A stretch of DNA of 64,000 nucleotides, taken from Macrostomum lignano. Its lineage: Eukaryota. This document shows positions 1 to 64,000 of this stretch, piece after piece. Positions within the stretch are counted from its first letter, which is position 1. Each line of letters opens with the position of its first letter. The position numbers and the translations under genes are program-made. A model generated the notes under the pieces. That model saw nothing but the letters and a program-made list of their open reading frames with translations, had not been told where the DNA came from and made no database searches. The stretch is from positions 773,179-837,178 of the forward strand of contig NIVC01000104.1 in NCBI GenBank assembly GCA_002269645.1, written 5' to 3'.

Positions 1-3000
1 TCATACTGACATGTTCGATCTGCATCTGATGGTTCAGGTGAGTCTAATATACCTTTACTACCTCTATCTGAAGGCGTGGCGATTCTAGAAAATAGACAAT
101 TATGTCGCCCAAAATATTTGACGACATTCTCACTGCAGCGTATCAATCCGAACCTTATACTGTACTAGAGATTAGCAATTCGATTCCGTAATGCATAAAA
201 ATTAATAGCCCCCACGTAATCATTGTACATAGACAACACCCCATTTAAATCAACCAACCCTCCCCATATAGTCTACATAAGACAGCACCCCATTCAAAAT
301 CAACCAACCCTCCCCATGTAGTCTACATAGACAACACCCAATTTAAGTCAACCAACCCTCCCCATGTATTGTACATAGACAACACCCAATTTAAGTCAAC
401 CAACCCTCCCCATGTATTGTACATAGACAACACCCAATTTAAGTCAACCAACCCTCCCCATGTAGTCCACATAGACAACACCCAATTTAAGTCAACCAAC
501 CCTCCCCATGTAGTCTACATAGACAACACCCCATTTAAATCAACCAACCCTCCCAATGTAGTCTACATAAGACAACACCCCATTCAAAATCAACCAACCC
601 TCCCCATGTAGTCTACATAGACAACACCCCATTTAAGTCAACCAACCCTCCCCATGTAGTCCACATAGACAACACCCAATTTAAGTCAACCAACCCTCCC
701 AATGTAGTCTACATAAGACAACACCCAATTTAAATCAACCAACCCTCCCAATGTAGTCTACATAAGACAACACCCCATTCAAAATCAACCAACCCTCCCC
801 ATGTAGTCTACATAGACAACACCCCATTTAAGTCAACCAACCCTCCCCATGTAGTCCACATAGACAACACCCAATTTAAGTCAACCAACCCTCCCCATGT
901 AGTCTACATAGACAACACCCCATTTAAATCAACCAACCCTCCCAATGTAGTCTACATAAGACAACACCCCATTTAAATCAACCAACCCTCCCCATGCAGT
1001 GTACATAGACAACAACCCATTTAAATCAACCAACCCTGCCCATGCAGTGTATATAGATAACACCCCACTTAAATCAACCAACCCTGCCCATGCAGTGTAC
1101 ATAGACAACACCCCATTTAAATCAACCAACCCTGCCCATGCAGTATACATAGACAACAACCCATTTAAATCAACCAACCCTGCCCATGCAGTATACATAG
1201 ACAACAACCCATTTAAATCAACCAACCCTGCCCATGCAGTGTATATAGATAACACCCCACTTAAATCAACCAACCCTGCTCATGCAGTGTACATAGATAG
1301 CACCCCACTTAAATCAACCAACCCTCCACATGCAGTGTATATAGACAACATCCCTTTAGAATCAAACAAGCCCCCATGAAGTGTACATAGACAACACCCC
1401 CTCTCATATTGTGCTCAAATACCACATGTTTGTACATAGTCAGCCTTTCTAGTCTAATTAACAAATAGCTCGCATAAATCAATAAGAGCACACAAATATT
1501 CTCCAATAGGACGCCATCCGCGGCCTCACCCGCAATTATCGCCTCTACCTGCCGCCCGGCATTGGCTATGACGTACTGACGCCGTTTCTTCGCGAGATGT
1601 GCCACCTGGCCTGGGGCATGTCGGCCCTGGCACATCCGGTCGACGCCGCAGTCGGCTACGACGGCGAATTATTCGACGAGTTCAGGTAAGAATTCAGCCG
1701 CAAAAAGTCCAGCTATGTTTCGTTTGCTGCTCAATAGGCCAACAGCTATACAAAAATGTCTCCTAAGCAACCCATATGTACTTGTAATTTGTAGTCTCAA
1801 AATATTAATTAAAAAAAAGTTTAAGTTCCTCAAATCCCCACTGAATCTCCAAAAATTCACATCTAGTCTCCTGAAATTCCAATCTAGTCTCTTAAAATTC
1901 CAACCTAATCTCCTGAAATCCCATCTAATCTCCTGAAATCCCATCTAATCTCCTGAACTCTCGTCTAATTTCCTAAAATCCCATCTAATCTCCTGCAATC
2001 CCATCTAATCTCCTGAACGCCCTATCTAATCTTCTGAAATCCCCATCAATCTCCTGAAATCCCATCTAATCTCTTGAAATCCCCATCTAATCACCTGCAT
2101 CCCATCTAATCTCCCGAACCCCCAACTAATCTCCTGCAATCCATATTCCGCATTGCAGGTACCGGCGAAGCTACGATTCGGAGTTCTCAGCCACGCTGGT
2201 GTCGCATCACATCTGGCCTGCGCTGGTGCAGGGCACGGCGGTGCTCGTGAAAGGCGAGGCATGCACCCGCCGAGGCGGATACGTGAGTGCCGACTGATCT
2301 GGTGGCTTGAAGGAGAGTATGGATGCTGAGAATTGAGCAGATGATGAAAGGATGCTGAGATTTGAGCAGATGATGAATGGATGCTGAGAAGGGAGGAGAT
2401 GATGAAGGGATGCTCAGAAGAGAGGAGATGATGAAGGGATGCAGAGAAGAGAGGAGATGATGAAGGGATGCTGAGAAGGGAGGAGATGATGAAGGGATGC
2501 TCAGAAGAGAGGAGATGATGAAGGGATTCTGAGAAGGGAGAAGATGATGAAGGGATGCTGAGAATTGAGCAGATGATGAAGGGGGATGCTCAGAAGAGAG
2601 GAGATAATGAAGGGATGCTGAGAATTGAGCAGATGATGAAGGGATGCTGAGAATTAAGCAGATGATGAAGGGATGCTGAGAATTGAGCAGATGATGAAGG
2701 GGGATGCTCAGAAGAGAGGAGATGATGAAGGGATGCTGAGAATTAAGCAGATGATGAAGGGATGCTGAGAATTGAGCAGATGATGAAGGGGGATGCTCAG
2801 AAGAGAGGAGATGATGAAGGGATGCTGAGAAGAGAGGAGATGATGAATGGATGCTGAGAAGGGAGGAGATGATGAAGGGATGCTGAGAAGGGAGGAGATG
2901 ATGAAGGGATGCAGAGAAGAGAGGAGATGATGAAGGGATGCTGAGAAGGGAGGAGATGATGAAGGGATGCTCAGAAGAGAGGAGATGATGAAGGGATGCA

Positions 3001-4800
3001 GAGAAGAGAGGAGATGATGAAGGGATGCTGAGAAGGGAGGAGATGATGAAGGGATTCTGAGAAGAGAGGAGATGATGAAGGGATGCTGAGAAGGGAGGAG
3101 ATGATGAAGGGATGCAGAGAAGGGAGGAGATGATGAAGGGATGCTCAGAAGAGAGGAGATGATGAAGGGATTCTGAAAAGAGAGGAGATGATGAAGGGAT
3201 GCTGAGAAGGGAGGAGATGATGAAGGGATGCAGAGAAGGGAGGAGATGATGAAGGGATGCTCAGAAGAGAGGAGATGATGAAGGGATGCTGAGAAGGGAG
3301 GAGATGATGAAGGGATGCTGAGAAGGGAGGAGATGAGCTTATCAAATGAAAATTTCTCAGACGAATTTTTTTCTCATAAATTTCTCATTTTTACAGTCAA
3401 GATGAATTACTGGCAGCCTTGAGCTGGCTGTCAGCATCACATAGCTAGCAACAAGATTTAATAAAATATAAACTACTGTATAAAAAAATTCCACTAAATT
3501 AAAATGAATGACACAAAGCAGTATAGTGGCTACATTTAAAGTCGTAAGTGTCCTTTCTGTTGCTGTGCCAACTACACGTAATATTTTTATATCAGATTTA
3601 ATAAGTTCTTGCGTGTTGGACTCTGATTCTACAACCAATTATATACATGCATTGACAATGTAATGTTTATTTCCCAATTCTATGTGCTTGCCATAGCTGA
3701 TTGATTTTTGAAATATTGTAGAGTAGCCCAAATTCTGTCTGTACAAAGCGTAGCATGTTTACATAGCTATTGTTTTCTATTATTAATTTATGTTATTTTA
3801 ACTTTTATTGTCTCATGCTGTTTTATAACTGAGTCGAAATGTAGTGCAGAAAAATGATTTATTAAATTTGCAGAGCTCGCGGTCAAGGAGTGCGTCCCGG
3901 TCTGCCTCGCCAGGTAAGTTAGCTAAACTTGTACGCCTCATAAATTAAAATCTATTATTGTAAAGTCTATGTTTGCAATAGTCTACTTACTAGAGCAGCT
4001 GAGTAAGCATATATAGGAATTGGAAACTTTGAATTTAGGTTAGGGTTTTAGTTCAGGTAAATGTTAGGTTTAGAGTTTAAGTTGGGTGAGTGTTAAAGTT
4101 TAGGTTGGGGGTTGAGTTTAGGTTGGGGGTTGAGTTTAGGTTGGGGTTGAGTTTAGGTTGGGGGTTGAGTTTAGGTTGGGGTTGAGTTTGGTTTGGGGGT
4201 TGAGTTTAGGTTGGGGGTTGAGTTTAGGTTGGGGTTGAGTTTAGGTTGGGGTTGAGTTTAGGTTGGGGGTTGAGTTTAGGTTGGGGGTTGAGTTTAGGTT
4301 GGGGGTTGAGTTTAGGTTGGGGTTAAGTTTAGGCTGGGGGTTGAGTTTAGGTTGGGGGTTGAGTTTAGGTTGGGGGTTGAGTTTAGGTTGGGGGTTGAGT
4401 TTAGGTTGGGGGTTGAGTTTAGGTTAAGTTAGGGGTTAGGGTTTAGCGTCGGGTTAGGGTTTATATTAGGGTAGGGATAGAGTTGTGGTTGGTTTAGGTT
4501 TTATTTTAGGTTACATGTAGAGTTAGGGTAGGGGCTAGCAGCCTATCTGCGTCAGTCAAACATCGTATACCCATAAGGATTTTAGCCTAAAGCGCATAAA
4601 TCTGAATCGAATAAAATTGACTTGCTCAACAATTCTTCGCAGCGCGAGTCAACGGCGCCGCCGGCACTGCCAGGTCTTCTGGGGCCGGCCGGACTCCGCG
4701 AGCTCCTTCTGGTGGCAACAAGCAGCAGCCGTCTGCTCGAGCCGATCTGGGAAGCACTGCTCGCACCGCCTCAACATCGCTGTCTCACTATATTGACTAA
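1..4800 (+). CDS. SPATA18: Mitochondria-eating protein (MIEAP/SPATA18) homologue, 5'-partial; join(<1..37,1510..1685,2159..2282,3874..3913,4643..4800)
   Basis: Exons join in frame across GT-AG introns (phases 0,2,0,1) to give HTDMFDLHLMVQ-DAIRGLTRNYRLYLPPGIGYDVLTPFLREMCHLAWGMSALAHPVDAAVGYDGELFDEFR-YRRSYDSEFSATLVSHHIWPALVQGTAVLVKGEACTRRGGY-SSRSRSASRSASP..., with TAA at 4798-4800. This matches the MIEAP C-terminal signature YRRSYDSDFTAPLV..HVWPAL....V..KGEAVTRRG and the SRSRSPSP tail. Confidence 0.9.
220..1400. repeat. 48-bp minisatellite (gtagtctacatagacaacacccaatttaagtcaaccaaccctccccat) in a MIEAP intron
   Basis: Visible tandem copies; the 16-aa periodicity in the ORF track equals 48 bp. Confidence 0.95.
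1835..2150. repeat. ~20-bp degenerate minisatellite (cccatctaatctcctgaaat)
   Basis: Tandem copies inside intron 1686-2158. Confidence 0.85.
2320..3335. repeat. 29-bp purine-rich minisatellite (gatgatgaagggatgctgagaagggagga)
   Basis: Tandem copies inside intron 2283-3873. Confidence 0.95.
4080..4500. repeat. 18-bp G-rich telomere-like minisatellite (ggttgggggttgagttta) grading into TTAGGG-like sequence
   Basis: Tandem copies at 4090-4425, followed by ttaggggttagggtttag...gggttaggg. Confidence 0.9.
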
Positions 4801-6040
4801 TTTTAGATCAATAGAAAAACTACGGTAGAAAGTGTAGCTTTTTATTTAAGCGACAAGAATCGCTAGGTTTAGTTTGTGTTTTCAGACATTTTAGTTCATT
4901 TTTTGTTTGTTTTGTTTTTTGTTGGTCATTTTCTGGTTTCCGCATTGACGCCATTGTTGCACTGCTGACTAACCCTTTGTTGATATTTTAAACAATTTCT
5001 ATTAATTGAATTTAAATACGATTTGCGCTTACTTAAAGTAGACAACCATGAATATGCTAACAGTACAGAATTTTTAGCCCTTTTCTTATTGAACTTTCTT
5101 TTCGCTGTCTTCTGCTCGTATTTCGCGCAGCTTTTATTCTGTTCGATGCGCTGATGAAATGAGAATTTCGTTTTTAGCCATTCTTCTGGGACCGTTGGGA
5201 AAGCATCTTTGCTTGGCTTTCGCTTAACCCAGGAAACGAGCAAAGATAACCTTCCCTGATGGACCTGCCGCCAACCGACGCTGGTATTACTGTGTACATA
5301 GCTTTCTACTCACATCTGGACAGCTCGATTGAGGGGAGAATCTCCCAGAGCGACAACAATAACCAGCGGGATCTGTCTTTTTAATTTCTACTTTTTTCTA
5401 AGAAAGTCTTTATACACTCATTAGTTTATTAGCTAAGAAATTTTGCGTTATTAGATATTTTTTACATACTGGTGCTGAATTTCAACTATTTTTGTTTTTC
5501 ATGTACGCTAATCCAGTTTTAAATTTGCACGCGTTTTTTGTTTAACACGGCGATTTGTTATATCATGTAGTTGCTATGTTCTCTTTCGCGGGTCCGTGTG
5601 ACCGTTGAAATTTCAACTTTGAAAAACTCATTTCAAACATTTCAAACATATCCATAGTAGCTATTTTTTGTTTTTTCCGCTTCATTTTTTGTTTTAGTTA
5701 TTGCTTGGGGCAACCAATTTTTTCATTAGAATGTGTTTGCACCACTGGCAAGGCAGTAAAGTGCATGCGAATGCGCATTATTTTATTTAGCAGCAATGAG
5801 CATTGAACTTTATACACGCTACTATATTTCCATCTAGATACGAATTAATTTGCTTTGAGAAGCTTTCTTAGTAAAATATATTCTATGGTAAAAACCAGCA
5901 CTGATCTGGCAAGCATGTGACTACTGCTAGTAGGATGCTAGTAGGAAATCATACATCAGTGTTTCGGAATTTTTTATTTTTTTGCATAGAACAAATAAAT
6001 TGTTTACCATGGTAAAATAGGGTGCTTTCACAAAGGGGAT

Positions 6041-6946
6041 GTCAACTTAAGCACCAGAATGGAGCCCGAAGTTCAGCTCCGGCCCAAACCGACTGCAATC
6101 GATAACTTGTCGGCCCAGACGACTAGAATCGCCGAGACATCCCATCCGGCTCCCTTCCTTGGGGTCCCAGGGATAAAGGGGATAAAATGGGGAACTCATG
6201 TCAACTTAAGGCTCTGGAATGGAGCCCGAAGTTCAGCTCCGGCCCAAACCGACTGCAATCGATAACTTGTCGGCCCAGACGACTAGAATCGCCGAGACAT
6301 CCCATCCGGCTCCCTTCCTTGGGGTCCCAGGGGATAAAGGGGATAAAATGGGGATCTCATGTCAACTTAAGGCTCTGGAATGGAGCCCGAAGTTCAGCTC
6401 CGGACCAAACCGACTGCAATCGATAACTTGTCGGCCCAGACGACTAGAATCGCCGAGACATCCCATCCGGCTCCCTTCCTTGGGGTCCCAGGGGATAAAG
6501 GGGATAAAATGGGGATCTCATGTCAACTTAAGGCTCTGGAATGGAGCCCGAAGTTCAGCTCCGGCCCAAACCGACTGCAATCGATAACTTGTCGGCCCAG
6601 ACGACTAGAATCGCCGAGACATCCCATCCGGCTCCCTTCCTTGGGGTCCCAGGGGATAAAGGGGATAAAATGGGGATCTCATGTCAACTTAAGGCTCTGG
6701 AATGGAGCCCGAAGTTCAGCTCCGGCCCAAACCGACTGCAATCGATAACTTGTCGGCCCAGACGACTAGAATCGCCGAGACATCCCATCCGGCTCCCTTC
6801 CTTGGGGTCCCAGGGGATAAAGGGGATAAAATGGGGATCTCATGTCAACTTAAGGCTCTGGAATGGAGCCCGAAGTTCAGCTCCGGCCCAAACCGACTGA
6901 AATCGATAACTTGTCGGCCCAGACGACTAGAATCGCCGAGACATCC
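6041..6946 (+). repeat. Left arm: ~5.6 tandem copies of a 161-bp unit
   Basis: Unit starts (gtcaacttaag) at 6041, 6200, 6361, 6522, 6683 and 6844; the last copy is truncated at 6946. Confidence 0.95.
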
Positions 6947-7950
6947 GCTGTGCCACTATGTTCCGCTATGTGCTGCTTTGCTGCCATTAAGCAGGACAAA
7001 TGTTTTAACGAGAGGCACAAACCGTATCAGTGGCTGCCGTCAGCCGGCTTCAGTGAGCCCAGCCGATTAGACGTTGTTATCGAGACCTCGATGGCAAAGT
7101 ACAACCGGGCGCATCCAGGTTTTGAATCATTTAAACAGCTCCACCGTCATGGACAGGGCTATCGTTGTTCGAATTCGGGCAGAATTTCATGCGCCGAGTG
7201 CTCTTGTCCAACGAACTTGACGAAATTGAGCAGCTGCACTTCAACTGTGATCTGAAACGTGCCCCCCTGCTAACACAAGGGCATGGATTGCTGTCAACCC
7301 GCTGGATCCAAAAAGCTCGGGGTTCCCCCGAATTCACACAGTGAATTTGTCAGAGGTTTCGGTGGATCCGTATCAACTAAATCAAGCCGATTATTACATT
7401 CAAAACATTCGTGTCAAGGAGGTTCTCGATAGCTACGAAGGTGACTCCTGGAGAGACTTTGAGTTACACATCCAAGCCGCCGGGAGTGTTGGAAGTTTCG
7501 GCAAGCGACGCCGCTAGAAAACTCGAGCAACCGATTCGGTCGGTGGCATCCGTCTTGATTTTTCTAGCTGTCGTTTTCTCGCGCCATAATTCAAAATCCT
7601 ACCGCGTGATTCTTAGAGTGTGTGACAGCAGCGGACAATCGCTTTGGTTTTAGAGATCCAGGATTGCAACTTCTTCCTGGCTTCTACTCGTCAGCAAAAG
7701 CAGGAAGTAGGACTGCAGGCTGCGATTGTCATGTACGAGCGTAATGGCAGTGCTCAAACTCCTGGGCTGCTACGCTTACCACCAAGATACATATGTAGCT
7801 ATCGAAGGTCTGGTGCCGGCCTTCGCTTTGTTGATTTCGCTCTTCCACGCAGCCTTGTTGCCAGACTTTATGCTAGAGAAAACGCTTTACCACAGCAGCG
7901 AAAGCCTACTGAGCAACAGTTTAGGGGCCAGCGAGAGGAGTTTCAGTCAG
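6947..7950 (+). pseudogene. Decayed C-terminal fragment of a DDE_Tnp_4 (PIF/Harbinger-ISL2EU-Spy group) transposase with a SWIM-like motif
   Basis: Frame-broken pieces SRLDVVIETSMAKYN, GFPRIHTVNLSEVSVDPYQLNQADYYIQNI, VFSRHNSKSYRVIL and GFYSSAKAGSRTAGCDCHV/VMAVLKLLGCY. These resemble, from memory, the FP.L...L..IT.G.YQL.QA.SY / SRH....Y / GWYC.CK.G.RTVGCCAHVASVLWYLG motifs. Not verified by HMM. Confidence 0.5.
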
Positions 7951-9518
7951 CCCAAGGAAGGGAGCCGGATGGGATGTCTCGGCGATTCTAGTCGTCTGGG
8001 CCGACAAGTTATCGATTGCAGTCGGTTTGGGCCGGAGCTGAACTTCGGGCTCCATTCCAGAGCCTTAAGTTGACATGAGATCCCCATTTTATCCCCTTTA
8101 TCCCCTGGGACCCCAAGGAAGGGAGCCGGATGGGATGTCTCGGCGATTCTAGTCGTCTGGGCCGACAAGTTATCGATTGCAGTCGGTTTGGGCCGGAGCT
8201 GAACTTCGGGCTCCATTCCAGAGCCTTAAGTTGACATGAGATCCCCATTTTATCCCCTTTATCCCCTGGGACCCCAAGGAAGGGAGCCGGATGGGATGTC
8301 TCGGCGATTCTAGTCGTCTGGGCCGACAAGTTATCGATTGCAGTCGGTTTGGGCCGGAGCTGAACTTCGGGCTCCATTCCAGAGCCTTAAGTTGACATGA
8401 GATCCCCATTTTATCCCCTTTATCCCCTGGGACCCCAAGGAAGGGAGCCGGATGGGATGTCTCGGCGATTCTAGTCGTCTGGGCCGACAAGTTATCGATT
8501 GCAGTCGGTTTGGGCCGGAGCTGAACTTCGGGCTCCATTCCAGAGCCTTAAGTTGACATGAGATCCCCATTTTATCCCCTTTATCCCCTGGGACCCCAAG
8601 GAAGGGAGCCGGATGGGATGTCTCGGCGATTCTAGTCGTCTGGGCCGACAAGTTATCGATTGCAGTCGGTTTGGTCCGGAGCTGAACTTCGGGCTCCATT
8701 CCAGAGCCTTAAGTTGACATGAGATCCCCATTTTATCCCCTTTATCCCTGGGACCCCAAGGAAGGGAGCCGGATGGGATGTCTCGGCGATTCTAGTCGTC
8801 TGGGCCGACAAGTTATCGATTGCAGTCGGTTTGGTCCGGAGCTGAACTTCGGGCTCCATTCCAGAGCCTTAAGTTGACATGAGATCCCCATTTTATCCCC
8901 TTTATCCCCTGGGACCCCAAGGAAGGGAGCCGGATGGGATGTCTCGGCGATTCTAGTCGTCTGGGCCGACAAGTTATCGATTGCAGTCGGTTTGGGCCGG
9001 AGCTGAACTTCGGGCTCCATTCCAGAGCCTTAAGTTGACATGAGATCCCCATTTTATCCCCTTTATCCCCTGGGACCCCAAGGAAGGGAGCCGGATGGGA
9101 TGTCTCGGCGATTCTAGTCGTCTGGGCGACAAGTTATCGATTGCAGTCGGTTTGGGCCGGAGCTGAACTTCGGGCTCCATTCCAGAGCCTTAAGTTGACA
9201 TGAGATCCCCATTTTATCCCCTTTATCCCCTGGGACCCCAAGGAAGGGAGCCGGATGGGATGTCTCGGCGATTCTAGTCGTCTGGGCCGACAAGTTATCG
9301 ATTGCAGTCGGTTTGGTCCGGAGCTGAACTTCGGGCTCCATTCCAGAGCCTTAAGTTGACATGAGATCCCCATTTTATCCCCTTTATCCCTGGGACCCAA
9401 GGAAGGGAGCCGGATGGGATGTCTCGGCGATTCTAGTCGTCTGGGCCGACAAGTTATCGATTGCAGTCGGTTTGGTCCGGAGCTGAACTTCGGGCTCCAT
9501 TCTGGTGCTTAAGTTGAC
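7951..9518 (-). repeat. Right arm: ~9.8 tandem copies of the same 161-bp unit, inverted
   Basis: Reverse complement of the left-arm unit; identical ORF translations appear on the minus strand. Confidence 0.95.
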
Positions 9519-9784
9519 ATCCCCTTTCAAAAGCTTTAAATTTCACAGCGTCAAAAACTTCATATAACAATAACTATGCAGTAGTTTTCTACGTTGTGAA
9601 ATTTCGATTTCACAAGGTCGATGTTGTGAAATTTCGACCTTGTGAAAGTTTAGACCTCGTAAAATATCGATCTTGTGAAAGAAGGTGCTTTCGACGCTGT
9701 GAAATTTCGAGTTTGTGAACCCCCCCCCCCCGGATGGGGAACGTAGAGAAGAGGGGGAGGGGTAGAGAGGAGGGTAGGGTGGGG

Positions 9785-11195
9785 AGACGAGGAGGAGAGA
9801 GGAGTGGAGAGGTGGGGGAGAGGAGGGGAGAGGAGGGAGCTGTGGGGAGAGGAGGGGAGCTGTGGGGAGAGGAGGGGAGCTGTGGGGAGAGGAGGGAGCT
9901 GTGGGGAGAGGAGGGGAGCTGTGGGGAGAGGAGGGGAGCTGTGGGGAGAGGAGGGGAGCTGTGGGGCGAGGAGGGGAGCTGTGGGAGAGGAGGGAGCTGT
10001 GGAGAGAGGAGGGGAGCTGTGGGGCGAGGAGGGGAGCTGTGGGGAGAGGAGGGAGCTGTGGAGAGAGGAGGGGAGCTGTGGGGAGAGGAGGGAGCTGTGG
10101 AGAGAGGAGGGGAGCTGTGGGGAGAGGAGGGGAGCTGTGGGGAGAGGAGGGAGCTGTGGGGCGAGGAGGGGAGCTGTGGGAGAGGAGGGGAGCTGTGGGG
10201 AGAGGAGGGGAGCTGTGGGGAGAGGAGGGAGCTGTGGGGCGAGGAGGGGAGCTGTGGGGAGAGGAGGGGAGCTGTGGGGAGAGGAGGGGAGCTGTGGGGA
10301 GAGGAGGGGAGCTGTGGGGAGAGGAGGGGAGCTGTGGGGAGAGGAGGAGAGCTGTGGGGAGAGGAGGGGAGCTGTGGGGAGAGGAGGGGAGCTGTGGGGA
10401 GAGGAGGGAGCTGTGGGGAGAGGAGGGAGCTGTGGGGAGAGGAGGGAGCTGTGGGGAGAGGAGGGAGCTGTGGGAGAGGAGGGAGCTGTGGGGAGAGGAG
10501 GGAGCTGTGGGGAGAGGAGGGAGCTGTGGGGAGAGGAGGGAGCTGTGGGGAGAGGAGGGGAGCTGTGGGGAGAGGAGGGAGCTGTGGGGAGAGGAGGGAG
10601 CTGTGGGGAGAGGAGGGGAGAGGTGGGGAGAGGAGGGAGCTGTGGGGAGAGGAGGGGAGCTGTGGGGAGAGGAGGGAGCTGTGGGGAGAGGAGGGGAGAG
10701 GTGGGGAGAGGAGGGAGCTGTGGGGAGAGGAGGGAGCTGTGGGGAGAGGAGGGAGCTGTGGGGAGAGGAGGGGAGAGGTGGGGAGAGGAGGGAGCTGTGG
10801 GGAGAGGAGTGGAGAGGTGGGGAGAGGAGGGAGCTGTGGGGAGAGGAGGGGAGAGGTGGGGAGAGGAGGGAGCTGTGGGGAGAGGAGTGGAGAGGTTGGG
10901 AGAGGAGGGAGCTGTGGGGAGAGGAGGGAGCTGTGGGGAGAGGAGGGAGCTGTGGGGAGAGGAGGGAGCTGTGGGGAGAGGAGGGAGCTGTGGGGAGAGG
11001 AGGGAGCTGTGGGGAGAGGAGGGGAGCTGTGGGGAGAGGAGGGGAGCTGTGGGGAGAGGAGGGGAGCTGTGGGGAGAGGAGGGGAGCTGTGGGGAGAGGA
11101 GGGGAGCTGTGGGGAGAGGAGGGGAGCTGTGGGGAGAGGAGGGGAGCTGTGGGGAGAGGAGGGGAGCTGTGGGAAGAGGAGGGGAGCTGTGGGGT
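9785..11195. repeat. 19-20-bp G-rich minisatellite (gggagctgtggggagagga)
   Basis: Long tandem array; the long ORFs over it are repeat artefacts. Confidence 0.95.
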
Positions 11196-11824
11196 AGATA
11201 TGGAGTTGATAGGAGCGGAAAGCTGAATTTACGGTGTTTGATATGCCAAGTAATAAATCCAGGACCCATTTAAAAGAAACATAGATAAGTGATGATTTAG
11301 ACAATTTAATTTTTAGTATATGGATAGCAATAATATACGTAAAAACGGGCAAGAACAATATCATTATATTATTTTTAGATAATCCAAACTCTAAAAAATG
11401 GATTCGCAACTACTCTGATTTGCACTTGTCGCCTGGGCCTCAGACGCAAAAAAAATCACAAAATTACAGGTCAAATTATTTGTTTTATTCGGTAAATATC
11501 ACGAATAGGGCAGATCACTACGCAAGGAATTATTGATATGATGAAGAGAAATCAAAAGTACAAAATTTGTAATCGCGACAGAAAGAAATCGAAAATGATT
11601 TTTTTCAGCACTCTGTGATTGAGAGCTGCTGGTGGCTTCATTCTTGTACTTCACTTCTAAATCGCAGCGGCAGCCGGAACCTTGAAACAACATCAAGTGT
11701 TAAGTTTTGTTGATCGTTAAATTAGCTCAGATGAATTCTAAACAACATTCAAATAAGATCGTTGCGTTTGAGTAGCTTAAACTGGCTTATAATTTTTCAA
11801 CTTTGAATTCTCCAGGCGTGCACA

Positions 11825-12130
11825 AGCTAACGAGGGGTTAGTGGTTAGAGCGTCGGACTCACGACTCGAAGGTCGGGGGTTCGATTCTCAAACTACTCGG
11901 AACAATTTGTATCTTTGAGCAAGACACTTAACTCTGCATTGCTTCAGTTCACCCAGCTGTAAAATGGGTGCCAGCATTAGCTGGGGTAATTGAGGGTGTG
12001 TGTGGCGACCCCCAGTCCTTGGACTGAACAGCCGTACGCAGCCTTCTGTTACTCGAGCTGTCGGTTACTCAGATGGCCATTGGGGCAAGTGTAATCAATT
12101 ATTGTTAATATTATTATAATTATAATTATT
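11825..12130 (+). mobile_element. tRNA-derived SINE with a CORE-like central domain
   Basis: Pol III A box tagtggttagagc (11839-11851) and B box ggttcgattc (11878-11887). Then tgtatctttgagcaagacacttaactctgcattgcttcagttcacccagctgtaaaatggg, similar to the MIR/CORE consensus tgtgaccttgggcaagttacttaacctctctgtgcctcagtttcctcatctgtaaaatggg. An (ATT)n-like tail lies at about 12100-12130. Confidence 0.75.
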
Positions 12131-13029
12131 ACTTGCTATCCATAAACGTCTTGAAAGCTCACGTCGCAAAATATGTTAGTATTCATAGACTAGTTCGTCT
12201 CAAAAATTATAAATTATAAAAATCAGGCATGCGCATTCAATAATAATAACAAAAATGAATGCTATCGTAATAGATTTCTTCAATCAAATATCTTAAATTA
12301 TAAGCTGGTCTATGCTACTCGAACGCTCACTTGACATAGTGTTTAGAATGCTTGAAAGTAGGAACACCAAGCCATCCCCTGACAATTTGTTTCAAATTTG
12401 GCTGCGCCAGAACGGCTGGTGCACACCGAAATTCAAAATTCAAGTAATTGGAAGGCACAAAAAGTTAGAGGGAACTTTTTGCTGTGCACCTTCTCAAACT
12501 AGACTCAAGTCGCCAGGTCTCTGGCCGTCGAGGTATTCAACGGTAGTCAACTGGTGCCATTGATTGAAGATGCTTGGGAGGCCAGCTGAGGATGTCCAGC
12601 AGTTGAGGCTTGCCCACTGTCGAGGCTTGATTAGAGACAGAGGAATTCGCAACTGCGTCCATAGTCACCTGGTGCCACCTGCTGAAGGTCCAGAAGCTCC
12701 ACCAAGGTGAAGGTCAGTGACTAACGAAAGTCAGAGCTGATACAGACACATGTGCTCGACGTGCTGATGAAGTTTGGAGGCTTGGCAAGGCTACACTGAT
12801 GCGCAGTGCTGGTTGGCGCTTAAGGTTGTATTGAACACACTGGAGCATATGGGAAAAATCCGACCTACTGGCAGAATCGTTGAATATCTCGACGGTCTGG
12901 AAGGCTGGCGACTTGATTCTTAGTTTAGAAGGTGCGTAACTAAAAGTTAGCCAGCGCTCGGGAATTTCTTGTGCATGCGTTGCTCATCGAACAAACAAAA
13001 CTTACAGTGCCGCCGAATGGAGTCTGGCG

Positions 13030-13563
13030 TCACTCGCTACCAGCGCTGCCAACGTCGTTACTCTGACTTGTGTCGGTTTTGTCGGACAGTGGCGAATTGT
13101 CCGACTTTGCACTTTCGGCTTGCGCTTCGATCGTTGTCGGCATCTCGACCGCAGTCTGTGGCGACTGAGTCGACAAGAAACTGTCCGACAACTCCGATAG
13201 AACCCGTTTGTTATCCTGGCGCCACTTCACAATTTCCATGTGCTTCAACATGCGAAGCTCCCATGTGATGTCTTTCGACTGGTCTGCTTCTGCGGTCTTC
13301 GTCTCGGTCTTCTTCTTCTTGGCCTTCTTAGTTTTAAAACGCGACGGCTGCAACTGTAGAGTTGATGTCGAGCTGCCCGAGATGCGGGAATCTGGCCAGA
13401 GGCCCAGCTTCCGGGACTCTTTGACGGCCATGGAGCTGAAGCTCTCTTCGTCACCAAGCCTCGGCGATCGCATCGGCTGGAGAATGTAGAACACCAGAGC
13501 CACAGTGGCCAGCAGCGATGCTGTTGCCAAGCTGAACAAAAGAGCCGTAAGGATCTCGTACAT
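13030..13563 (-). CDS. Orphan intronless 177-aa protein with an N-terminal hydrophobic anchor and a Lys/Ser-rich body
   Basis: ATG to TGA open frame in GC-rich, coding-like sequence; hydrophobic stretch ILTALLFSLATASLLATVALVFYIL; basic patch KTKKAKKKK. No family recognised. Confidence 0.5.
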   Translation of the reverse strand: MYEILTALLFSLATASLLATVALVFYILQPMRSPRLGDEESFSSMAVKESRKLGLWPDSRISGSSTSTLQLQPSRFKTKKAKKKKTETKTAEADQSKDITWELRMLKHMEIVKWRQDNKRVLSELSDSFLSTQSPQTAVEMPTTIEAQAESAKSDNSPLSDKTDTSQSNDVGSAGSE

Positions 13564-13770
13564 TGCTTTTCTATCTATAGCTTTTTAATCTCTACTTGGT
13601 AAAATTTGCATTTTTCTTAAGTGGCGCTCGCGCAAACCGAGAAGACGTCAATCAAAAAACGCACCGAAACGCCATAGACAATATTTGAGATGCAATTTAA
13701 ATTTGGTGTGAACTCAGAGTTCGATTCTTAGTGAATATAGGGCCGTATGTATAAAGCCTAGTCCAGATTA

Positions 13771-13889
13771 GCTAGTCCGGACTTGGATGGTTCAGTCTAT
13801 AGTCTATGGTCTAGCTACCTTTGGTTCTGTCTATAGTAGACCGGTCTAACTTTGTGTTTCTGCATACCAAATCCAAGTCCAGACTAGCT
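13771..13889. mobile_element. MITE-like remnant with an inverted repeat
   Basis: agctagtccggacttggat (~13771) versus atccaagtccagactagct (13871-13889), 18/19 complementary. Confidence 0.4.
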
Positions 13890-14398
13890 TTTCAAGACCG
13901 GACTACCCTGGACCATAGATAATAAAAATACTAGATGGGTCACTCGCCTATTTCATGAATATAAGCTACTTTCAATTGGGCGTCTGTATAGAGTTTTTTG
14001 GATATATTTGTGCACCAAGTAAAATTTTAATATTATGTTTAGATTATGATGTAGACAAAAAAGTTTTGACATTTCAGACCCTCATTTTTCAATCGTTGAA
14101 GTTTATTTACACCGACGGAAAATGAAAAAAATTTAACAAAAATGTGGGCTTGGTTTAAACTTGTTACAATAGAGGCATGCGCATTGCACTTACATGCATA
14201 TATATTTTGATGCACAGGGTCGTATCAACTTATCATGTACACACAGATTGAAAGAAGATTTCACAAAAGTAAATATCATACTCGTACATATAAAGCATTT
14301 GGGCAAGACAAAAGCATTCTGAAAACAAAATTTTACTTTATAGTTTAAGCTAGCTACTTACCCGGTAGTTGAAGCAAATGTTCATGAACAAATTGAAG

Positions 14399-16065
14399 TT
14401 AACGAATGTGACAAAGAACGAAATAAATTAAATGTTTAATACAAACACGAAGGTTAATTAAGTTTACTCTCATCTTTCTGCTTGCTGAGCATCGCGCTGT
14501 CCTATCTTTCAGCGGCTTGGCCTCACAGCGGCACCAGTGATGCAGTCTGAGACGAGCGAACTTGCACAGTTGCTGCCAGACGATCTCCGTGTGCACGGAG
14601 CACGAGGGGAAGGTCACATTTGCGTGTCGGAAGCATCTCAAAACTGAATGGCTCACGTGATTCTGAAGCAATGTAGTCTTTGATAATGAGCCAAATAAAG
14701 ATTCCAACAGCATAAAACTTTCCAGAACTGTGTTAGCCTCCTAGTGCAGATGTATTGAAAATCGCCGTTTTGCAGCAGCGATCTGGCCAGACTTTTGATC
14801 GATGAGATAGACAGCAGCCACGCTTCCTTGAACTTCATTGTAGCCTTTTGCTTCCTTCCGCTGTGAGGTCTAAATTTCCAACTGTGTAAGAAGCTTTCAG
14901 CTGCCTCCAATTCTGTGATCTGCTCTTCAAGAATATCTCGAGAAAGGGGGCGCTTTAGACCCCTATCGAATAAGTGAGCTGAGTTAAGAATGTCAAATAT
15001 GCCATTAATTCTATCTAAAAACTCTGCTGTTTGCTCTCCATCGGACTCTATTATTTTGTGATACACCGAAGTTCGGATTCCACTGGCGACTGAATGGCTG
15101 AAAATCTGCGCCGCGAGAGATACTTTCATTTTGTTTCCAACCTGTAGGTTGAAGTGACTGTCGCTTAACCTTGGTGCCAATTTAAGCTTGTTGCGACTAT
15201 CGGCCTGATAGAAGTCCGTAACATGCTTCCATTTTGCTGTTTTGCAATTGTCGAGCACAATTTCGTTCTTGAACAAAGCATTTCGCGCATTTTTCAGGCA
15301 GTGAGGGATATCAATGATGACAAAAACAGGCTCGTTTGTCACTGGGTGGTGCAGAAACGGCTTGGAAGAGCTTGGTAGCTCCACTGGCTTGTCTCTTGGT
15401 CTGCAACCAAAGCTACAACGATAATTCCTGCATGATGACACGCCGTCAGACAACTTTCAATCGCGTTACGAAAACCTTCCTGTCCGAGACTCCGATGCGC
15501 AGGGTAATATGCAATCGATTGCTTCCAGTTGTGCAAAATACCGCGAACTACGCCTGCTACCGCTTCGTCTACAACTTTTGGTGCATCCGCTTGAGCAGGA
15601 TCAGTCTCAAAGCCAATTATCTTGTCCTTGTACTGGCTGTAACGCACACATCCTGACAAGCTCATTCCATCAAAGCAAAGAGTGGCCACTCGCTCTTTCT
15701 CTGTGCAGTCTTGCAACTTTTTTCTCATCAGCTTCATGGTAACTTCACAAACGCCTTCTTCCTGAAAAAACAATCTGATGCGCCGCTTAATTGACGTCTC
15801 TGATGGAAATGGCATCTTCCACTGATCTCGCAGAAGTCGGTACGCGGCAGGACTTTTGTGATGCACTTGAATAGCAGAGCAGATGTCTTCGACAGCCCAA
15901 TGCATGCCACGGTGGCGAGACTTTGTTTGCTTCATAGAGCTCTGCACTAGACGGTGGAGGGCGCTGCTGCTGCTGCTGCTGAACTTTCCAACCTGCGAGT
16001 CTTCGATTTTGCGCCGCAGCTTATCGATCGTCTTCTCCTGCCGACACAGCTTTCGTCGCTGTGTC
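14399..16065 (-). mobile_element. P-element/THAP9-like transposase pseudogene
   Basis: ORF 15339..15947 has SPAAYRLLR..W.MPFPSETSIKR, LCFDGMSL, GVVRGILHNWKQSIAY and VALVADQE. ORF 14653..15453 has DIPHCLKNARNAL, KLKLAPRLSDSHF, KMKVSLAAQIFSHSVA, TAEFLDRINGIFDILNS and YICTRRLTQ. Frameshifting deletions lie near 15370 and 14730. A possible CATAGATAATA... terminus is at 13914. Confidence 0.9.
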
Positions 16066-16327
16066 TAAAGAAATTGTCTAAATGCTAGTACTTTAGGATG
16101 CCTAGGCATTTTTCAGTTGACTTCTTTAACTTGCACTCTCTCCCTCAAGTTACATGTAGCTAGAAATTTCTAGGTAGAAATTCTAGAAAAGTCTGATTGC
16201 TTTAGCTATGGCAGTTGAAGCCTTTTCACTAACATTCTTTAGACAAACGAATCAAAATCTTTTTCATCAAAATGCCAATGAAGTGCTGCGTCCAAGGATG
16301 CCGAAACAATTCAGGATTGCGTTCACT

Positions 16328-17035
16328 GACGTCTCTGCTCTGCCAAAAACTACGAGCTCATGGTGTCCGGCGACCTCAACGCCCACCATACTCACTGGGG
16401 CAGCACTGGCATCAATCAGAGAGGCGAAGACCTCATAGCCTACGTTGCCTCTACGATCCTCGAGTTTTGCAACTCTGGGTCCACCCCTACATTTGACAAC
16501 GGACGGTGGTCGGAGGTGATCGACGCCACACTCGCAACACACAAGCTCTACTAGAGTATTGGGGCGTGGCGGGTGCTTCCAGCGTCCTCACTCCCCGATC
16601 ACAAGTTCATTTCCTTCAACCTGATGGCCGCGCGTAGCGCAAATCGTGTTACGTGGAGACCAGAACGCCAGAAACACTGATTGGGAAACCTTCGGGCTCG
16701 CCCTGAAGGAGTTCCATCGGCCAACCATTCACCATCACGTCATGCCAATAAGCAAATGAGTGGGCGACTGTGCTGACAGAAACGCTAACCGCCGCCTTTG
16801 AGGCATCCTGCCCTTTAAAAGCCTATAAAGGGAAAAATCCGCGCCGTGGTGGAATCTAAGCGACTCCACCGCAGAGCAACTAAAACTAAGAGCCCATCGG
16901 ACCAAACCGCCTATCATGAAGTAGTCCATGAGTTTAAAAGGCAGGTTAGGAACGCGACAGCTCAGAATTGCGTCAATACTACGAGGAGCTAGAGGGCTCA
17001 CGCCCGACCTTCAGAACTGTGAAAGCCCTTAAACT
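16328..17035 (+). mobile_element. Decayed non-LTR retrotransposon fragment (APE endonuclease plus linker; LOA/R1-like)
   Basis: LMVSGDLNAHHTHWGS...NQRGEDL...NSGSTPTF...IDATLAT...W.V...PDHKFISF, then TDWETF, FEASCP, PWWN and EFKRQVRNA, with stops and frameshifts. Confidence 0.8.
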
Positions 17036-17044
17036 GGACAAAAT

Positions 17045-17245
17045 GTCTTAGAGCTTTCTGTTCATCCCTTGAGACAGGTTCTTCAGAAAGGTTACTCGCT
17101 GTCTTCCACGATCTCTTTTTCCTTCAATCTTCCCAGTCTCTGACAGCTGCTCGATTCCTCCCTTCCTCACAATATGACCAGAGAACTTCGCCTGCCGTCT
17201 CCGAATGTTCGCCATCAACCTCCTTTTACAGTCAGCTCTTAGTAG
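17045..17245 (-). mobile_element. 3' fragment of an RTE-clade LINE ORF
   Basis: Reverse strand reads LMANIRRRQAKFSGHIVRKGGIEQLSETGKIEGKRDRGRQRVTFLKNL, the typical RTE C-terminal GH..R...GKIEGKR.RGRQR motif. Confidence 0.8.
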
Positions 17246-17586
17246 AACAACTTCATTCGCTGCGTGAAGATGTCAAGCCTGCAGTGGCATTATTTAGATT
17301 TTGAATTGCCCGATCGAATTACGAACGAATCGAGCTTGGGAAGTCACGCCCCATAGACTACACGCGCGTCTGAAGCCTTACACGAAGCGCGCAGACTTTC
17401 TACTTTGAATCCTAATATCTAGGAATGGGAGCTGGAACTGACCAAAAAGATTGAATTTCAAAATCAATCAAAATCGCTGAGGTCACGCAAAATCGGTCAG
17501 GTTAGCCTACTTTTATCTACCTAAGGTATTTAAGGATTTGTTTGGCCATAGTAACTAGCCCTATAGTTGACGATCAAGCTGCATCA

Positions 17587-20208: not shown

Positions 20209-20852
20209 TTGAGTCGTTTTTAGTTGCTAGAGGGTTAAGTGTATCGTTCTGCTTGAGAGTTAGTGAGTTCATTGTTTGCAGCTTGTTTGCAGACTTGCGT
20301 TTCGGTCCCCATGAAGAGAATTACACGGCAAATATCACAGGCAAATTTTAATGCACTGGCCCGAAACGAATGACGTCGTGCACGGAATCAAAGCTTGGGT
20401 ACTTTGTTGGAAAAGTCGTCGCCACCAGCTCGTTTTAATCTTGAAGGTGGCTCTCAGCGTGAAACGCATCAACAAGGACTACTCAAACTACTCCTAGGTG
20501 CTCAAGGGAGTTTGTCAGAGCTTCCCTGTGTTTCAGCGTTATGCTGCTTGACGGTGTCGACCACTGCCTGACGCAATGCCACATCGAATTTAGGCTTAAA
20601 AAAATGAGTTACAATAATCAATTATCTGCAAACAAGCCCAAGTGATTGATGAAATTAAAATTGTTTAAATTAAAAGAAGCTTAATTTCTGATGAGATGTA
20701 AAACAAAACGTTCAAGCGATGTTATATTTAGTTAAACTGATCAGTCTGGAGTCAGAAGTTCAGAGTCCGGTCGTCTGTGAGTTGTCGTCAGTGCCAGCGA
20801 GTCTCAAGCTCCGATGAAGTGAGCTGGATGTCAGGTGTGGCTGCGGTAGCAT

Positions 20853-21047
20853 TTAACCAAGCCTAATCCTAGCCCTGACCCTGACAAACTTCTTGGCGTT
20901 GTCGACGGCCTCCTCCGACATGCTGGACTCGTCCACGTTGGACAGAGCCTCCAGAACGGCCATGGCCTCAGCCTTCTCCTCCTGGGTGGGCACGGCGACA
21001 GCCAGGGCTGCGCACAGCAAAAGTCCGAGAGCGAGTTGCCACTTCAT
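20853..21047 (-). CDS. Secreted peptide precursor A (signal + acidic pro-piece + KK + FVRVRARIRL-G); candidate amidated cationic peptide
   Basis: 64-aa intronless ORF MKWQLALGLLLCAALAVA|VPTQEEKAEAMAVLEALSNVDESSMSEEAVDNA|KK|FVRVRARIRLG*; a near-identical paralogue lies 2810 bp away. Confidence 0.8.
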   Translation of the reverse strand: MKWQLALGLLLCAALAVAVPTQEEKAEAMAVLEALSNVDESSMSEEAVDNAKKFVRVRARIRLG

Positions 21048-21127
21048 GATTGCTTGAGTAGGATCGATTCGAGTGTTTGAGCTGAGTCGAGTCTGAGCTT
21101 GTTATCTTGAGCAGTCGGCAGATGCGA

Positions 21128-21153
21128 ATTTATGCACATCGGATTGGCACGTG
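21128..21153 (-). promoter_or_regulatory. Putative core promoter of precursor A (E-box CACGTG, CCAAT, TATA-like CATAAAT)
   Basis: Minus strand reads CACGTG-CCAAT-ccgatgtg-CATAAAT about 80-105 bp upstream of the ATG; conserved in copy B (23938-23963). Confidence 0.4.
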
Positions 21154-21699
21154 TTTCCGGTCGGAGCGGCGACGTTGGTTGAGTTGAAAGCCTTCATGTG
21201 AGCAGGGCGGAGCAGATACTGCATGGCTTGCTTGTCTGTGAAGATTAGACAGCATTGTTTGCTTCATGACAGCTCAGCAATCAAAAGTGTGTTTAACAGA
21301 GTTTTCTCAGTGCAAGTGTATGCAGCTGAACAGTCTATTTGACTCTTATGACCTTTTTATGATTTTGATTGACACTTTATTGACTCTGAAGTGCTCATCG
21401 TTTTGGGCCATTGGCGAGAATTACACGAAAAGCCACAGTTCGGTCAGCTGCGAGCTGTCAAGTTCAGTCAGCCTCAGTCTTTGATTAAGCGACTTCGATA
21501 TCAGATCTAGCCAATATAATCCCTGTTAGCCGCCTCATACGAATATATAGATTGTGTGCTTACAGGAAAGCTGTTTAAGTTATTCCCCTGACCTAGTTAG
21601 TCTTCGATTGCCAAAAACGTGTGAGCCACAGGGCTCAAAATAGAACAAGCGTAACAGTGATGAACTGCTCAACAGGAGGATTTATTTTGTAGCTGCTTG

Positions 21700-23650: not shown

Positions 23651-23662
23651 CTGCGGTAGCAT

Positions 23663-63240: not shown

Positions 63241-64000
<760 letters not shown>

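What the first reader, a model, noticed from the sequence alone, without database searches (positions are those of the whole stretch)
6035..9524. Foldback-like transposon whose arms are tandemly amplified TIR units, inserted at AAA|TTT with no TSD (Spy signature)
Seen: ~5.6 copies (+) and ~9.8 copies (-) of a 161-bp unit flank a 1-kb core. Only the two outermost units carry the variant GGGGATGTCAACTTAAGCACCAGAAT; inner units read GGGGATCTCATGTCAACTTAAGGCTCTGGAAT. So the true termini are distinct and mutually complementary. Removing the element restores ...ttcacAAATTTcaaaag. Known: Spy elements of the PHIS group insert between AAA and TTT and make no TSD; long inverted arms built from tandem repeats are described for FB/Galileo-type foldback elements. 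Inference: a Spy-like element with foldback architecture, able to form ~0.9-kb hairpins or dsRNA and to seed a 161-bp satellite.
Basis: partly seen in the sequence, partly recalled or inferred. Interest (0 to 1): 0.76.

Follow-up and report, generated by a model that had tools for sequence, protein, structure and literature searches.

The report
Spy-type foldback transposon in flatworm
A 3.5-kb non-coding jumping gene in the flatworm Macrostomum lignano has arms made of repeated 161-bp units and sits exactly between AAA and TTT with no duplicated target, which a second genome copy lacking it confirms; this joins two known transposon designs not previously reported together.

Summary
A 3,490-bp element (6035-9524) has a 912-bp left arm (5.7 x 161 bp) and an inverted 1,574-bp right arm (9.8 x 161 bp) around a 1,004-bp non-coding core. 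A 26-bp terminal variant occurs only at the two ends.

The window is Macrostomum lignano contig NIVC01000104.1. A second, duplicated contig of the same assembly (NIVC01002867.1) is collinear on both sides but lacks the element. It reads ...CACAAGGTCGAAA|TTTCAAAAG..., with AAATTT intact.

So the element lies exactly between AAA and TTT, and nothing was duplicated. The two similar 9-mers flanking it looked like a degenerate 9-bp TSD of a Mutator/FB-type foldback. Both pre-exist in the empty copy as neighbouring units of a 16-bp host repeat, so that rival is rejected. The filled copy also lacks 7 ancestral bp, 1-3 nt left of the junction.

Best reading (about 0.7): a recently mobile, non-autonomous Spy-type (PHIS) element with foldback-type tandem-repeat arms.

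Not shown: a Spy transposase in this genome, other copies, any satellite seeded by the unit, or small RNAs. The terminus GGGGATGT fits the Spy GGANNNNG consensus only partly.

Verdict: a new variant of a known kind, of moderate interest.

The parts
6035..9524 (.). Whole element, 3,490 bp (GGGGATGTC...GACATCCCC). Equals NIVC01000104.1:779213-782702.
   Evidence: The boundaries are set by the empty-site comparison: the second contig is collinear up to AAA and from TTT onward. The terminal 26-mers are perfect inverted copies.
6035..6060 (+). Left terminal 26-bp variant, GGGGATGTCAACTTAAGCACCAGAAT. This is the true terminus and the presumed transposase recognition and cleavage end.
   Evidence: It occurs only here and at the other end. 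Inner units carry GGGGATCTCATGTCAACTTAAGGCTCTGGAAT instead.
9499..9524 (-). Right terminal 26-bp variant, the exact reverse complement of the left one.
6035..6946 (+). Left arm, 912 bp: 5 full 161-bp units plus a 103-nt partial unit (L1-L6).
6947..7950 (.). Unique core, 1,004 bp, with no recognisable coding capacity.
   Evidence: No long ORF. No Pfam match at E<=1 apart from one chance-level hit. No other copy in the window.
7951..9524 (-). Right arm, 1,574 bp: 9 full units plus a 124-nt partial unit (R1-R10, counted from the outside).
   Evidence: The variant order R1-R2 resembles R5-R6, which suggests block duplication within the arm.
6032..6034 (+). Host AAA, the left half of the AAATTT target.
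   Evidence: It is present in the empty copy as part of GTCGAAATTTCAAAAG.
9525..9527 (+). Host TTT, the right half of the target.
9525..9720 (.). Host 16-bp repeat (TTTCACAAGGTCGAAA-like units in both orientations) that provided the target. Every unit boundary is an AAATTT.
   Evidence: TRF period 16 at 9624-9680. Empty-copy sequence. AAATTT density is 1-2% per position within +-100 bp, against 0.09% in the whole window.

Best explanation
This is a non-autonomous cut-and-paste DNA transposon of Macrostomum lignano. It combines Spy-type integration with foldback architecture.

Shown:
- It is a discrete 3,490-bp insertion with perfect 26-bp termini.
- It is present in one of two duplicated genome blocks and absent from the other.
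- It lies exactly between AAA and TTT of an AAATTT that is intact in the empty block, and no target duplication was made.
- Its arms are inverted arrays of a 161-bp unit. Each unit repeats a mutated copy of the terminus, with a 5-bp insertion and a 6/7-bp substitution cluster.
- The core encodes nothing recognisable.

Inferred:
- It is mobilised in trans by a Spy-clade (PHIS superfamily) DDE transposase that binds the terminal motif, cuts flush at GGGG/CCCC, and joins both ends at the same phosphodiester position of AAA|TTT (zero stagger, hence no TSD).
- The inner units act as extra, non-cleavable transposase-binding sites, as proposed for Galileo.
- The arrays grow and shrink by unequal exchange or replication slippage. 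This explains the unequal arms (5.7 vs 9.8 units) and the repeated variant pattern R1-R2 / R5-R6.
- The outermost 26 bp are kept identical because only they work as ends.
- The insertion is recent, because the flanks of the two blocks are 99.8% identical over 7.7 kb on the right side.
For: Architecture and termini.

Genome identity: L003 equals window 7587-30208 at 100%.

Empty site: contig NIVC01002867.1 is collinear with window 4029-6014 (96.4%) and 9618-17367 (99.8%), with about 100 bp in place of 3.6 kb. It reads GGGTGCTTTCACAAGGTCGAAA|TTTCAAAAGCTTGAAATTTCACAGCG. The filled copy reads GGGTGCTTTCACAAA[element]TTTCAAAAGCTTTAAATTTCACAGCG.

Chance of an AAA|TTT junction: 0.12% of non-tandem positions in the window, and 1-2% even within the local repeat.

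Published Spy properties (PMC4122938): insertion between AAA and TTT, no TSD, and TIRs of 9-1,474 bp that start with GG. The experimentally active cgSpy starts AAA|GGGCCTGG, as seen in primer sequences in the supplement of PMC11304231. A GGG start is therefore compatible with Spy.

Non-autonomy.

Foldback potential.

Extra binding sites in Galileo arms: cited in PMC4079207.
Against: - Only one insertion event was seen. No other copy could be retrieved.
- No PHIS/DDE_Tnp_4-type ORF lies in the window, and the rest of the genome could not be searched.
- The terminus GGGGATGT departs from GGANNNNG at positions 3 and 8.
- The filled copy lacks 7 ancestral bp (AAGGTCG, AGGTCGA or GGTCGAA) 1-3 nt from the left junction. 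So the event was either not perfectly clean or was followed by an unrelated indel. Indels are frequent here: 5 in about 300 bp.
- Spy has been reported from arthropods, molluscs, cnidarians and a rotifer, not from flatworms.
- Published long Spy TIRs show 'no apparent subrepeat structure'.
Confidence: 0.7

Rival explanations
1. A TSD-less insertion made by something other than a Spy transposase. One option is an undescribed transposase family that happens to target AAATTT. The other is end-joining capture of an excised or extrachromosomal foldback fragment at a double-strand break. In both cases the AAA|TTT position is coincidental, and in the second the 7-bp loss is a repair scar.
For: A 7-bp deletion lies 1-3 nt from the left junction. 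No Spy transposase was found. The terminal consensus is only partly met. There is only one event. The local region is AAATTT-rich, so a chance hit there is 1-2% rather than 0.1%.
Against: Both ends are cut at exactly symmetrical positions of a perfect 26-bp TIR. The right junction is exact and AAA is retained on the left. Random capture would rarely give flush symmetric ends and also land on AAA|TTT. No TSD-less cut-and-paste family other than Spy is described in the papers read.
Confidence: 0.17
2. A classical Mutator/FB-type foldback element (like FB, Tetris or Tm1) that made a 9-bp TSD, now degenerate: TTTCACAAA on the left and TTTCAAAAG on the right (7 of 9 identical). A TSD of the form TTT...AAA would mimic the AAA|TTT flanks.
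For: The architecture is the classical one, and most foldbacks are assigned to Mutator with 8-10-bp TSDs (PMC4079207; PMC3169594). The flanking 9-mers match 7 of 9, against a background of 0.35-0.54% of sites. With one 9-mer removed, the site aligns without gaps, 28 of 31, to an inverted partner at 9689-9720.
Against: The empty copy contains both 9-mers already, 16 bp apart, as successive units of a host repeat: TTTCACAAGGTCGAAA / TTTCAAAAGCTTGAAA. Nothing was duplicated by the insertion. To rescue the TSD reading one would need a 16-bp deletion plus two substitutions.
Confidence: 0.02
3. A Helitron-like rolling-circle element, which also inserts between A and T without a TSD.
For: The insertion is between A and T with no TSD.
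Against: The ends are perfect terminal inverted repeats, GGGG.../...CCCC, not 5'-TC...CTRR-3' with a 3' subterminal hairpin (Helitron features from established knowledge). There is no Rep/helicase remnant.
Confidence: 0.02
4. Not a mobile element at all: either a local inverted duplication of a satellite array or an assembly artefact of a repeat-rich, partly duplicated genome.
For: The Mlig_3_7 assembly is repeat-rich and redundant (PMC5730564). Unit numbers in long arrays are hard to assemble.
Against: The presence/absence difference begins and ends exactly at the symmetric termini. The inverted repeat does not continue into the flanks beyond the host AAA/TTT. A unique 1-kb core separates the arms. 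The outermost units share private variants.
Confidence: 0.04

Closest known systems
Spy transposons (PHIS superfamily; Han et al. 2014, PMC4122938; active cgSpy/cvSpy, PMC11304231)
   Same: Insertion exactly between AAA and TTT of an intact AAATTT. No TSD. TIRs start with GG (cgSpy with GGG). Very variable and sometimes very long TIRs (9-1,474 bp). Abundant non-autonomous derivatives.
   Different: The arms are tandem arrays of a 161-bp unit, whereas published long Spy TIRs show no subrepeats. Terminal positions 3 and 8 differ from GGANNNNG. The host is a flatworm, a phylum not listed for Spy. No transposase has been identified. A 7-bp loss lies next to the junction.
Mutator-type foldback elements: Drosophila FB, Tetris (PMC4079207), Meloidogyne Tm1 (PMC3169594)
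   Same: Long inverted arms built from tandem subrepeats. Arms of unequal length. A non-coding middle. In Tetris the subrepeats share sequence with the terminal domain, and the subrepeats can seed satellite arrays.
   Different: Those make 8-10-bp TSDs; this element makes none (tested against an empty site). The unit here is 161 bp and begins in phase with the very terminus.
Galileo (P superfamily foldback-like element of Drosophila)
   Same: Internally repetitive long TIRs. Its tandem repeats carry secondary transposase-binding sites (as cited in PMC4079207), which is the model adopted here for the inner units.
   Different: Galileo makes 7-bp TSDs (established knowledge) and is mobilised by a P-like THAP transposase. 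The P-like ORF remnants 5 kb away in this window are present in both the filled and the empty genome copy, so they are unrelated to this insertion.
Helitrons
   Same: A|T insertion without a TSD.
   Different: Helitrons have no terminal inverted repeats, have TC/CTRR ends, and move by a rolling-circle mechanism.

Membership tests
Spy (PHIS) | [quoted passage not shown] | tested here: met
   The empty copy reads GTCGAAATTTCAAAAG. The filled copy reads ...AAA[GGGG...CCCC]TTTCAAAAG. This is one event only. The chance level is 0.12% of sites.
Spy (PHIS) | No target site duplication and no alteration of the target | tested here: met
   No duplication: both flanking 9-mers pre-exist in the empty copy. 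Caveat: 7 ancestral bp are missing 1-3 nt left of the junction in the filled copy, so 'no alteration' is met for the AAATTT itself but not for its immediate left neighbourhood.
Spy (PHIS) | TIRs with the terminal 5'-GGANNNNG-3' consensus | tested here: inconclusive
   The terminus is GGGGATGT. It matches GG but has G rather than A at position 3 and T rather than G at position 8. The active cgSpy starts GGGCCTGG, so position 3 is variable within Spy.
Spy (PHIS) | An autonomous partner encoding a Spy-clade DDE transposase (D79-80, D44-62, E; N-terminal HTH) | not testable with these tools
   No such ORF lies in the element or elsewhere in the window among ORFs of 85 aa or more. The M. lignano genome could not be searched by similarity.
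Spy (PHIS) | Family of dispersed copies sharing termini and target | not testable with these tools
   No second copy in the window or in the fetched loci. Public-collection scans gave 0 hits, but they do not cover this genome.
Foldback elements (FB / MULE-NOF, Tetris, Tm1) | Long inverted arms composed of tandem subrepeats, variable arm length, a non-coding or optional middle | tested here: met
Foldback elements (FB / MULE-NOF, Tetris, Tm1) | 8-10-bp (typically 9-bp) target site duplication | tested here: not met
   The apparent 7-of-9 direct repeat is two pre-existing host repeat units.
Galileo / P superfamily | 7-8-bp TSD and mobilisation by a P-like THAP transposase | tested here: not met
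   Flank matches are 5 of 7 and 5 of 8, and the empty site shows no duplication. The nearby P-like ORFs are shared by the filled and empty copies.
Helitron | 5'-TC...CTRR-3' ends, a 3' hairpin, no TIRs, A|T insertion | tested here: not met
   A|T insertion is met. The ends are GGGG.../...CCCC perfect TIRs.

The most novel reading that the evidence does not exclude
M. lignano harbours a live, flatworm-specific Spy lineage. Its non-autonomous derivatives have independently evolved FB-type arms in which every 161-bp unit is a disabled copy of the element end. Each inner unit contains AAAGGGGAT, the same 9-mer as host AAA plus the terminus. The arrays may therefore have started from duplications spanning an element/host junction, and may grow through transposase-linked events rather than only by unequal crossing-over. 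If so, this would be the first TSD-less foldback family, the first Spy in Platyhelminthes, and a candidate seamless integration vector for this regeneration model.
Probability: 0.2. Interest if true: 0.65.

Novelty: new variant of a known kind. Interest (0 to 1): 0.5.

Why it matters
Foldback elements are usually assigned to Mutator, or in Galileo's case to P. Spy is the only eukaryotic cut-and-paste group without TSDs, and it is described as having structurally plain TIRs and a narrow host range.

A Spy-type insertion signature on a foldback body, in a flatworm, supports the idea that foldback architecture arises repeatedly in unrelated superfamilies. It would widen the known range of Spy-type integration. 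The insertion is polymorphic between duplicated blocks whose right flanks are 99.8% identical over 7.7 kb, which points to recent DNA-transposon activity in a regeneration and transgenesis model.

It also gives a concrete locus, with filled and empty states side by side, for studying how TIR-derived tandem units expand.

Tried and rejected
- Protein search with the 122-aa ORF that runs through the 161-bp units: no hit.
- Exact look-ups of that ORF, of an arm-core ORF and of another window ORF: not on record.
- DNA pattern scans for the unit in metagenome, prokaryote-genome and viral collections: 0 hits. These collections do not hold this genome.
- Search for a paralogous empty site or other copies inside the window: none. 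A scan for other AAA|GG...CC|TTT inverted-repeat elements in the window also found none.
- Taxon identification from the P-like ORF gave only 48-57% hits, and the IF/lamin exon query gave nothing. Identification succeeded only with the CRAL-TRIO exon in the exhaustive search.
- The 9-bp TSD idea looked good against an inverted partner in the flank. It was rejected once the real empty site was read.
- AAA/TTT as part of the TIR: rejected, because both triplets are present in the empty copy.
- P-like transposase as the mobiliser: rejected (no 7-8-bp TSD, and the ORFs are shared by filled and empty copies).
- Pfam on core ORFs, Rfam and ARAGORN: nothing.
- Folding the single unit: not more stable than shuffles (z = -0.84).
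- A third genome copy (L004, NIVC01002033.1) starts only 3.3 kb upstream of the CRAL-TRIO gene, so it does not reach the site.
Full report
**1. What is in the sequence**

Tandem Repeats Finder reports a 161-bp period at 6039-6946 (5.7 copies, 98% matches) and at 7951-9520 (9.8 copies, 99%). The two arrays are inverted relative to each other, and the longest inverted pair is 890 nt at 99% complementarity. Between them lies a unique 1,004-bp stretch (6947-7950).

The 26-mer GGGGATGTCAACTTAAGCACCAGAAT occurs only at 6035-6060 (+) and 9499-9524 (-), even with three mismatches allowed, against zero expected. The inner form ...ATGTCAACTTAAGGCTCTGGAATGGAGCC occurs 14 times.

Cutting the arms into units shows the following:
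- The outermost units L1 and R1 differ from all inner units by lacking CTCAT after GGGGAT and by CACCAG in place of GCTCTGG.
- L1 and R1 also share a further private variant, CAGGGATAAAG.
- The arms end at different positions inside a unit: 103 nt on the left and 124 nt on the right.
- The variant order is not mirrored between the arms. In the right arm, R1-R2 resemble R5-R6, which points to block duplication within that arm.

The core has no long ORF and no Pfam match. A single-strand fold of the whole 3,490 nt pairs 909 of 912 left-arm bases with the right arm. The energy is -2,617 kcal/mol, against -1,232 for one shuffle, using RNA parameters.

**2. Boundary problem and a serious rival**

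From the window alone the inverted repeat runs 3 nt further, to AAA at 6032-6034 and TTT at 9525-9527. AAA/TTT could therefore have been host or element.

The 9 nt directly outside GGGG...CCCC are TTTCACAAA and TTTCAAAAG, which is 7 of 9 identical. Most foldback elements are assigned to Mutator and make 8-10-bp TSDs: Tetris (PMC4079207) and Tm1 (PMC3169594). A TSD of the form TTT...AAA would automatically mimic AAA|TTT flanks.

Background rates in the non-tandem part of the window were:

| Feature | Rate |
|---|---|
| AAA\|TTT junctions | 0.12% of sites |
| Adjacent 9-mers at least 7 of 9 identical | 0.35-0.54% of sites |
| TTTNNNAAA 9-mers | 0.07% |

An inverted partner of the right flank at 9689-9720 aligned best, 28 of 31 without gaps, to a reconstruction containing only one 9-mer. 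That seemed to favour a 9-bp TSD. With one copy and no empty site, the question was open.

**3. Identifying the genome and finding an empty site**

No other copy or paralogous empty site exists in the window. Searches of the available public collections with the unit found nothing.

An exhaustive protein search with the CRAL-TRIO exon (18362-18943) gave a 98% match. That protein is PAA90757.1 of Macrostomum lignano. Its locus (L003, NIVC01000104.1:780765-803386) is 100% identical to window 7587-30208. The window is therefore NIVC01000104.1:773179-837178 of assembly GCA_002269645.1 (Mlig_3_7).

This assembly is known to contain large duplicated blocks, because the DV1 line carries extra copies of the large chromosome (PMC5730564). 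The 177-aa protein encoded at 13030-13563 (-) is encoded identically on a second contig, NIVC01002867.1 (L006). That contig is collinear with window 4029-6014 (96.4%) and 9618-17367 (99.8%), but it has about 100 bp where the window has 3.6 kb.

**4. The empty site**

Read in window orientation, the two copies are:

| Copy | Sequence |
|---|---|
| Empty | ...AAAATAGGGTGCTTTCACAAGGTCGAAA\|TTTCAAAAGCTTGAAATTTCACAGCGGCGAAAACTT... |
| Filled | ...AAAATAGGGTGCTTTCACAAA[GGGGATGTC...GACATCCCC]TTTCAAAAGCTTTAAATTTCACAGCGTCAAAAACTT... |

In the record's own coordinates the junction lies between 126120 and 126121.

Three things follow:
- AAA and TTT are host bases, and AAATTT is intact in the empty copy, so the element is exactly 6035-9524.
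- The right junction is exact.
- Both 9-mers already exist in the empty copy, 16 bp apart, as successive units of a host 16-bp repeat (TTTCACAAGGTCGAAA / TTTCAAAAGCTTGAAA / TTTCACAGCGGCGAAA).

Nothing was duplicated by the insertion, and the 9-bp TSD rival fails.

The filled copy lacks 7 bp (AAGGTCG, AGGTCGA or GGTCGAA) that are ancestral. The same CTTTCACAAGGTCGAAATTTCA string occurs elsewhere in the host repeat, as the reverse complement of 9629-9654. The deletion cannot be placed directly at the junction, because at least one A lies between. This 300-bp region has five indels between the two copies, including a 30-bp change in host-repeat number. The loss may therefore be unrelated, but a link with the insertion cannot be excluded.

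**5. What it most likely is and how it works**

Insertion between AAA and TTT without a TSD is the defining signature of Spy elements of the PHIS superfamily (PMC4122938). That signature has been confirmed experimentally for cgSpy (PMC11304231).

Spy TIRs range from 9 to 1,474 bp and start with GG. The consensus is GGANNNNG. The active cgSpy starts GGGCCTGG, and crSpy and ldSpy start GGACCCCG and GGACAATG, as read from primer sequences in the supplement. The terminus here, GGGGATGT, fits at GG, has G at position 3 as cgSpy does, and differs at position 8.

I therefore read the element as a non-autonomous Spy-type transposon mobilised in trans.
- Shown: it is discrete, has symmetric perfect ends, is polymorphic between two near-identical genome blocks, sits at AAA|TTT, and made no TSD.
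- Inferred: a Spy-clade DDE enzyme with zero-stagger strand transfer mobilises it.
- Inferred: the inner units act as extra binding sites that cannot be cleaved because the terminal motif is disrupted. The analogy is Galileo, as cited in PMC4079207.
- Inferred: the arms change length by unequal exchange or slippage. The evidence is the unequal arms and the R1-R2 / R5-R6 variant pattern.

Confidence is about 0.7. The main alternative (about 0.17) is a TSD-less insertion by another route, with AAATTT hit by chance. That chance is 0.1% genome-wide and 1-2% within the local repeat. The Helitron, artefact and Mutator-TSD readings are each a few per cent or less.

**6. Comparison with what is known**

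In body plan this is a classical foldback element (FB, Tetris, Tm1, Galileo). In integration chemistry it behaves like Spy. It fails the TSD criterion of the Mutator- and P-type foldbacks. It meets two of the defining Spy criteria, is inconclusive on the TIR consensus, and cannot be tested here for a Spy transposase or for family-wide target preference.

[quoted passage not shown] Spy has been reported from arthropods, a bivalve, a hydrozoan and a rotifer, and in a later survey from three phyla, but not from flatworms. No paper in the searchable library combines Spy with foldback. I therefore rate it a new variant of a known kind.

**7. What remains open**

Still unknown are the copy number and flanks of other copies, the autonomous partner, whether independent 161-bp satellite arrays exist, whether the arms are transcribed and processed into small RNAs, and whether filled and empty are alleles or duplicated-chromosome copies.

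The P-like transposase remnants at 14.4-16.1 kb are present in both the filled and the empty contig and have nothing to do with this insertion.

Noticed in passing
window 14402-16064 (-): Unannotated remnants of a P-element-like transposase (Pfam TNP-like_RNaseH_N and TNP-like_GBD; best relatives are 57% in metagenomes and 48% to M. lignano BOX15_Mlig006180). They are present in both the filled and the empty genome copy. No convincing TIRs were found around them.
   Followed up: partly
window 6026-6034 and 9525-9720; L006 about 7640-7835: A host 16-bp repeat, TTTCACAAGGTCGAAA, in both orientations, forming an imperfect inverted structure. Every unit boundary is an AAATTT. Unit number differs between the two genome copies (a 30-bp indel).
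   Followed up: partly
window 6026-6034 vs L006 7821-7830: A 7-bp ancestral stretch (AAGGTCG/AGGTCGA/GGTCGAA) is missing in the filled copy, 1-3 nt left of the insertion junction. It is either an unrelated indel or a scar of the insertion.
   Followed up: partly
each inner 161-bp unit, e.g. window 6336-6344: Every inner unit contains AAAGGGGAT, the same 9-mer as host AAA plus the element terminus GGGGAT, within three short GGGGAT(A)AA(AT) sub-repeats. The chance of this is about 6%. It could be a fossil of a duplication that spanned an element/host junction.
   Followed up: no
whole window, e.g. 226-1400, 2321-3336, 9765-11194, 18971-19865, 30666-31560, 48735-50068, 63241-63999: Very dense minisatellites (70 TRF rows). 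They include a 20-bp unit x73 that begins about 240 bp to the right of the element, and a (TGTC)n run of about 190 copies at the window end. This is consistent with the published 15% simple and tandem repeats in this genome.
   Followed up: no
window 20718-21373 and 23528-24181: Two direct copies (93%) of a dispersed repeat of about 655 bp. The second copy overlaps a 128-bp x3 tandem array (23266-23652). There are no TG...CA ends, so it is not an obvious LTR pair.
   Followed up: partly
window about 11815-11990: A tRNA-like/SINE-like stretch (ggttagtggttagagcgtcggactc...gggggttcgattc). ARAGORN and Rfam report nothing.
   Followed up: partly
window 17587-20208, about 51300-53600, 37669-38460, up to about 4800: Host genes: CRAL-TRIO (PAA90757.1), which has a 21-bp x43 array inside its span; an intermediate-filament/lamin-like gene (Filament plus lamin-tail domain); a PHD-finger ORF; and a MIEAP-domain gene ending about 1.2 kb left of the element. 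The insertion lies between the MIEAP gene and the 177-aa gene, in an intergenic position.
   Followed up: no
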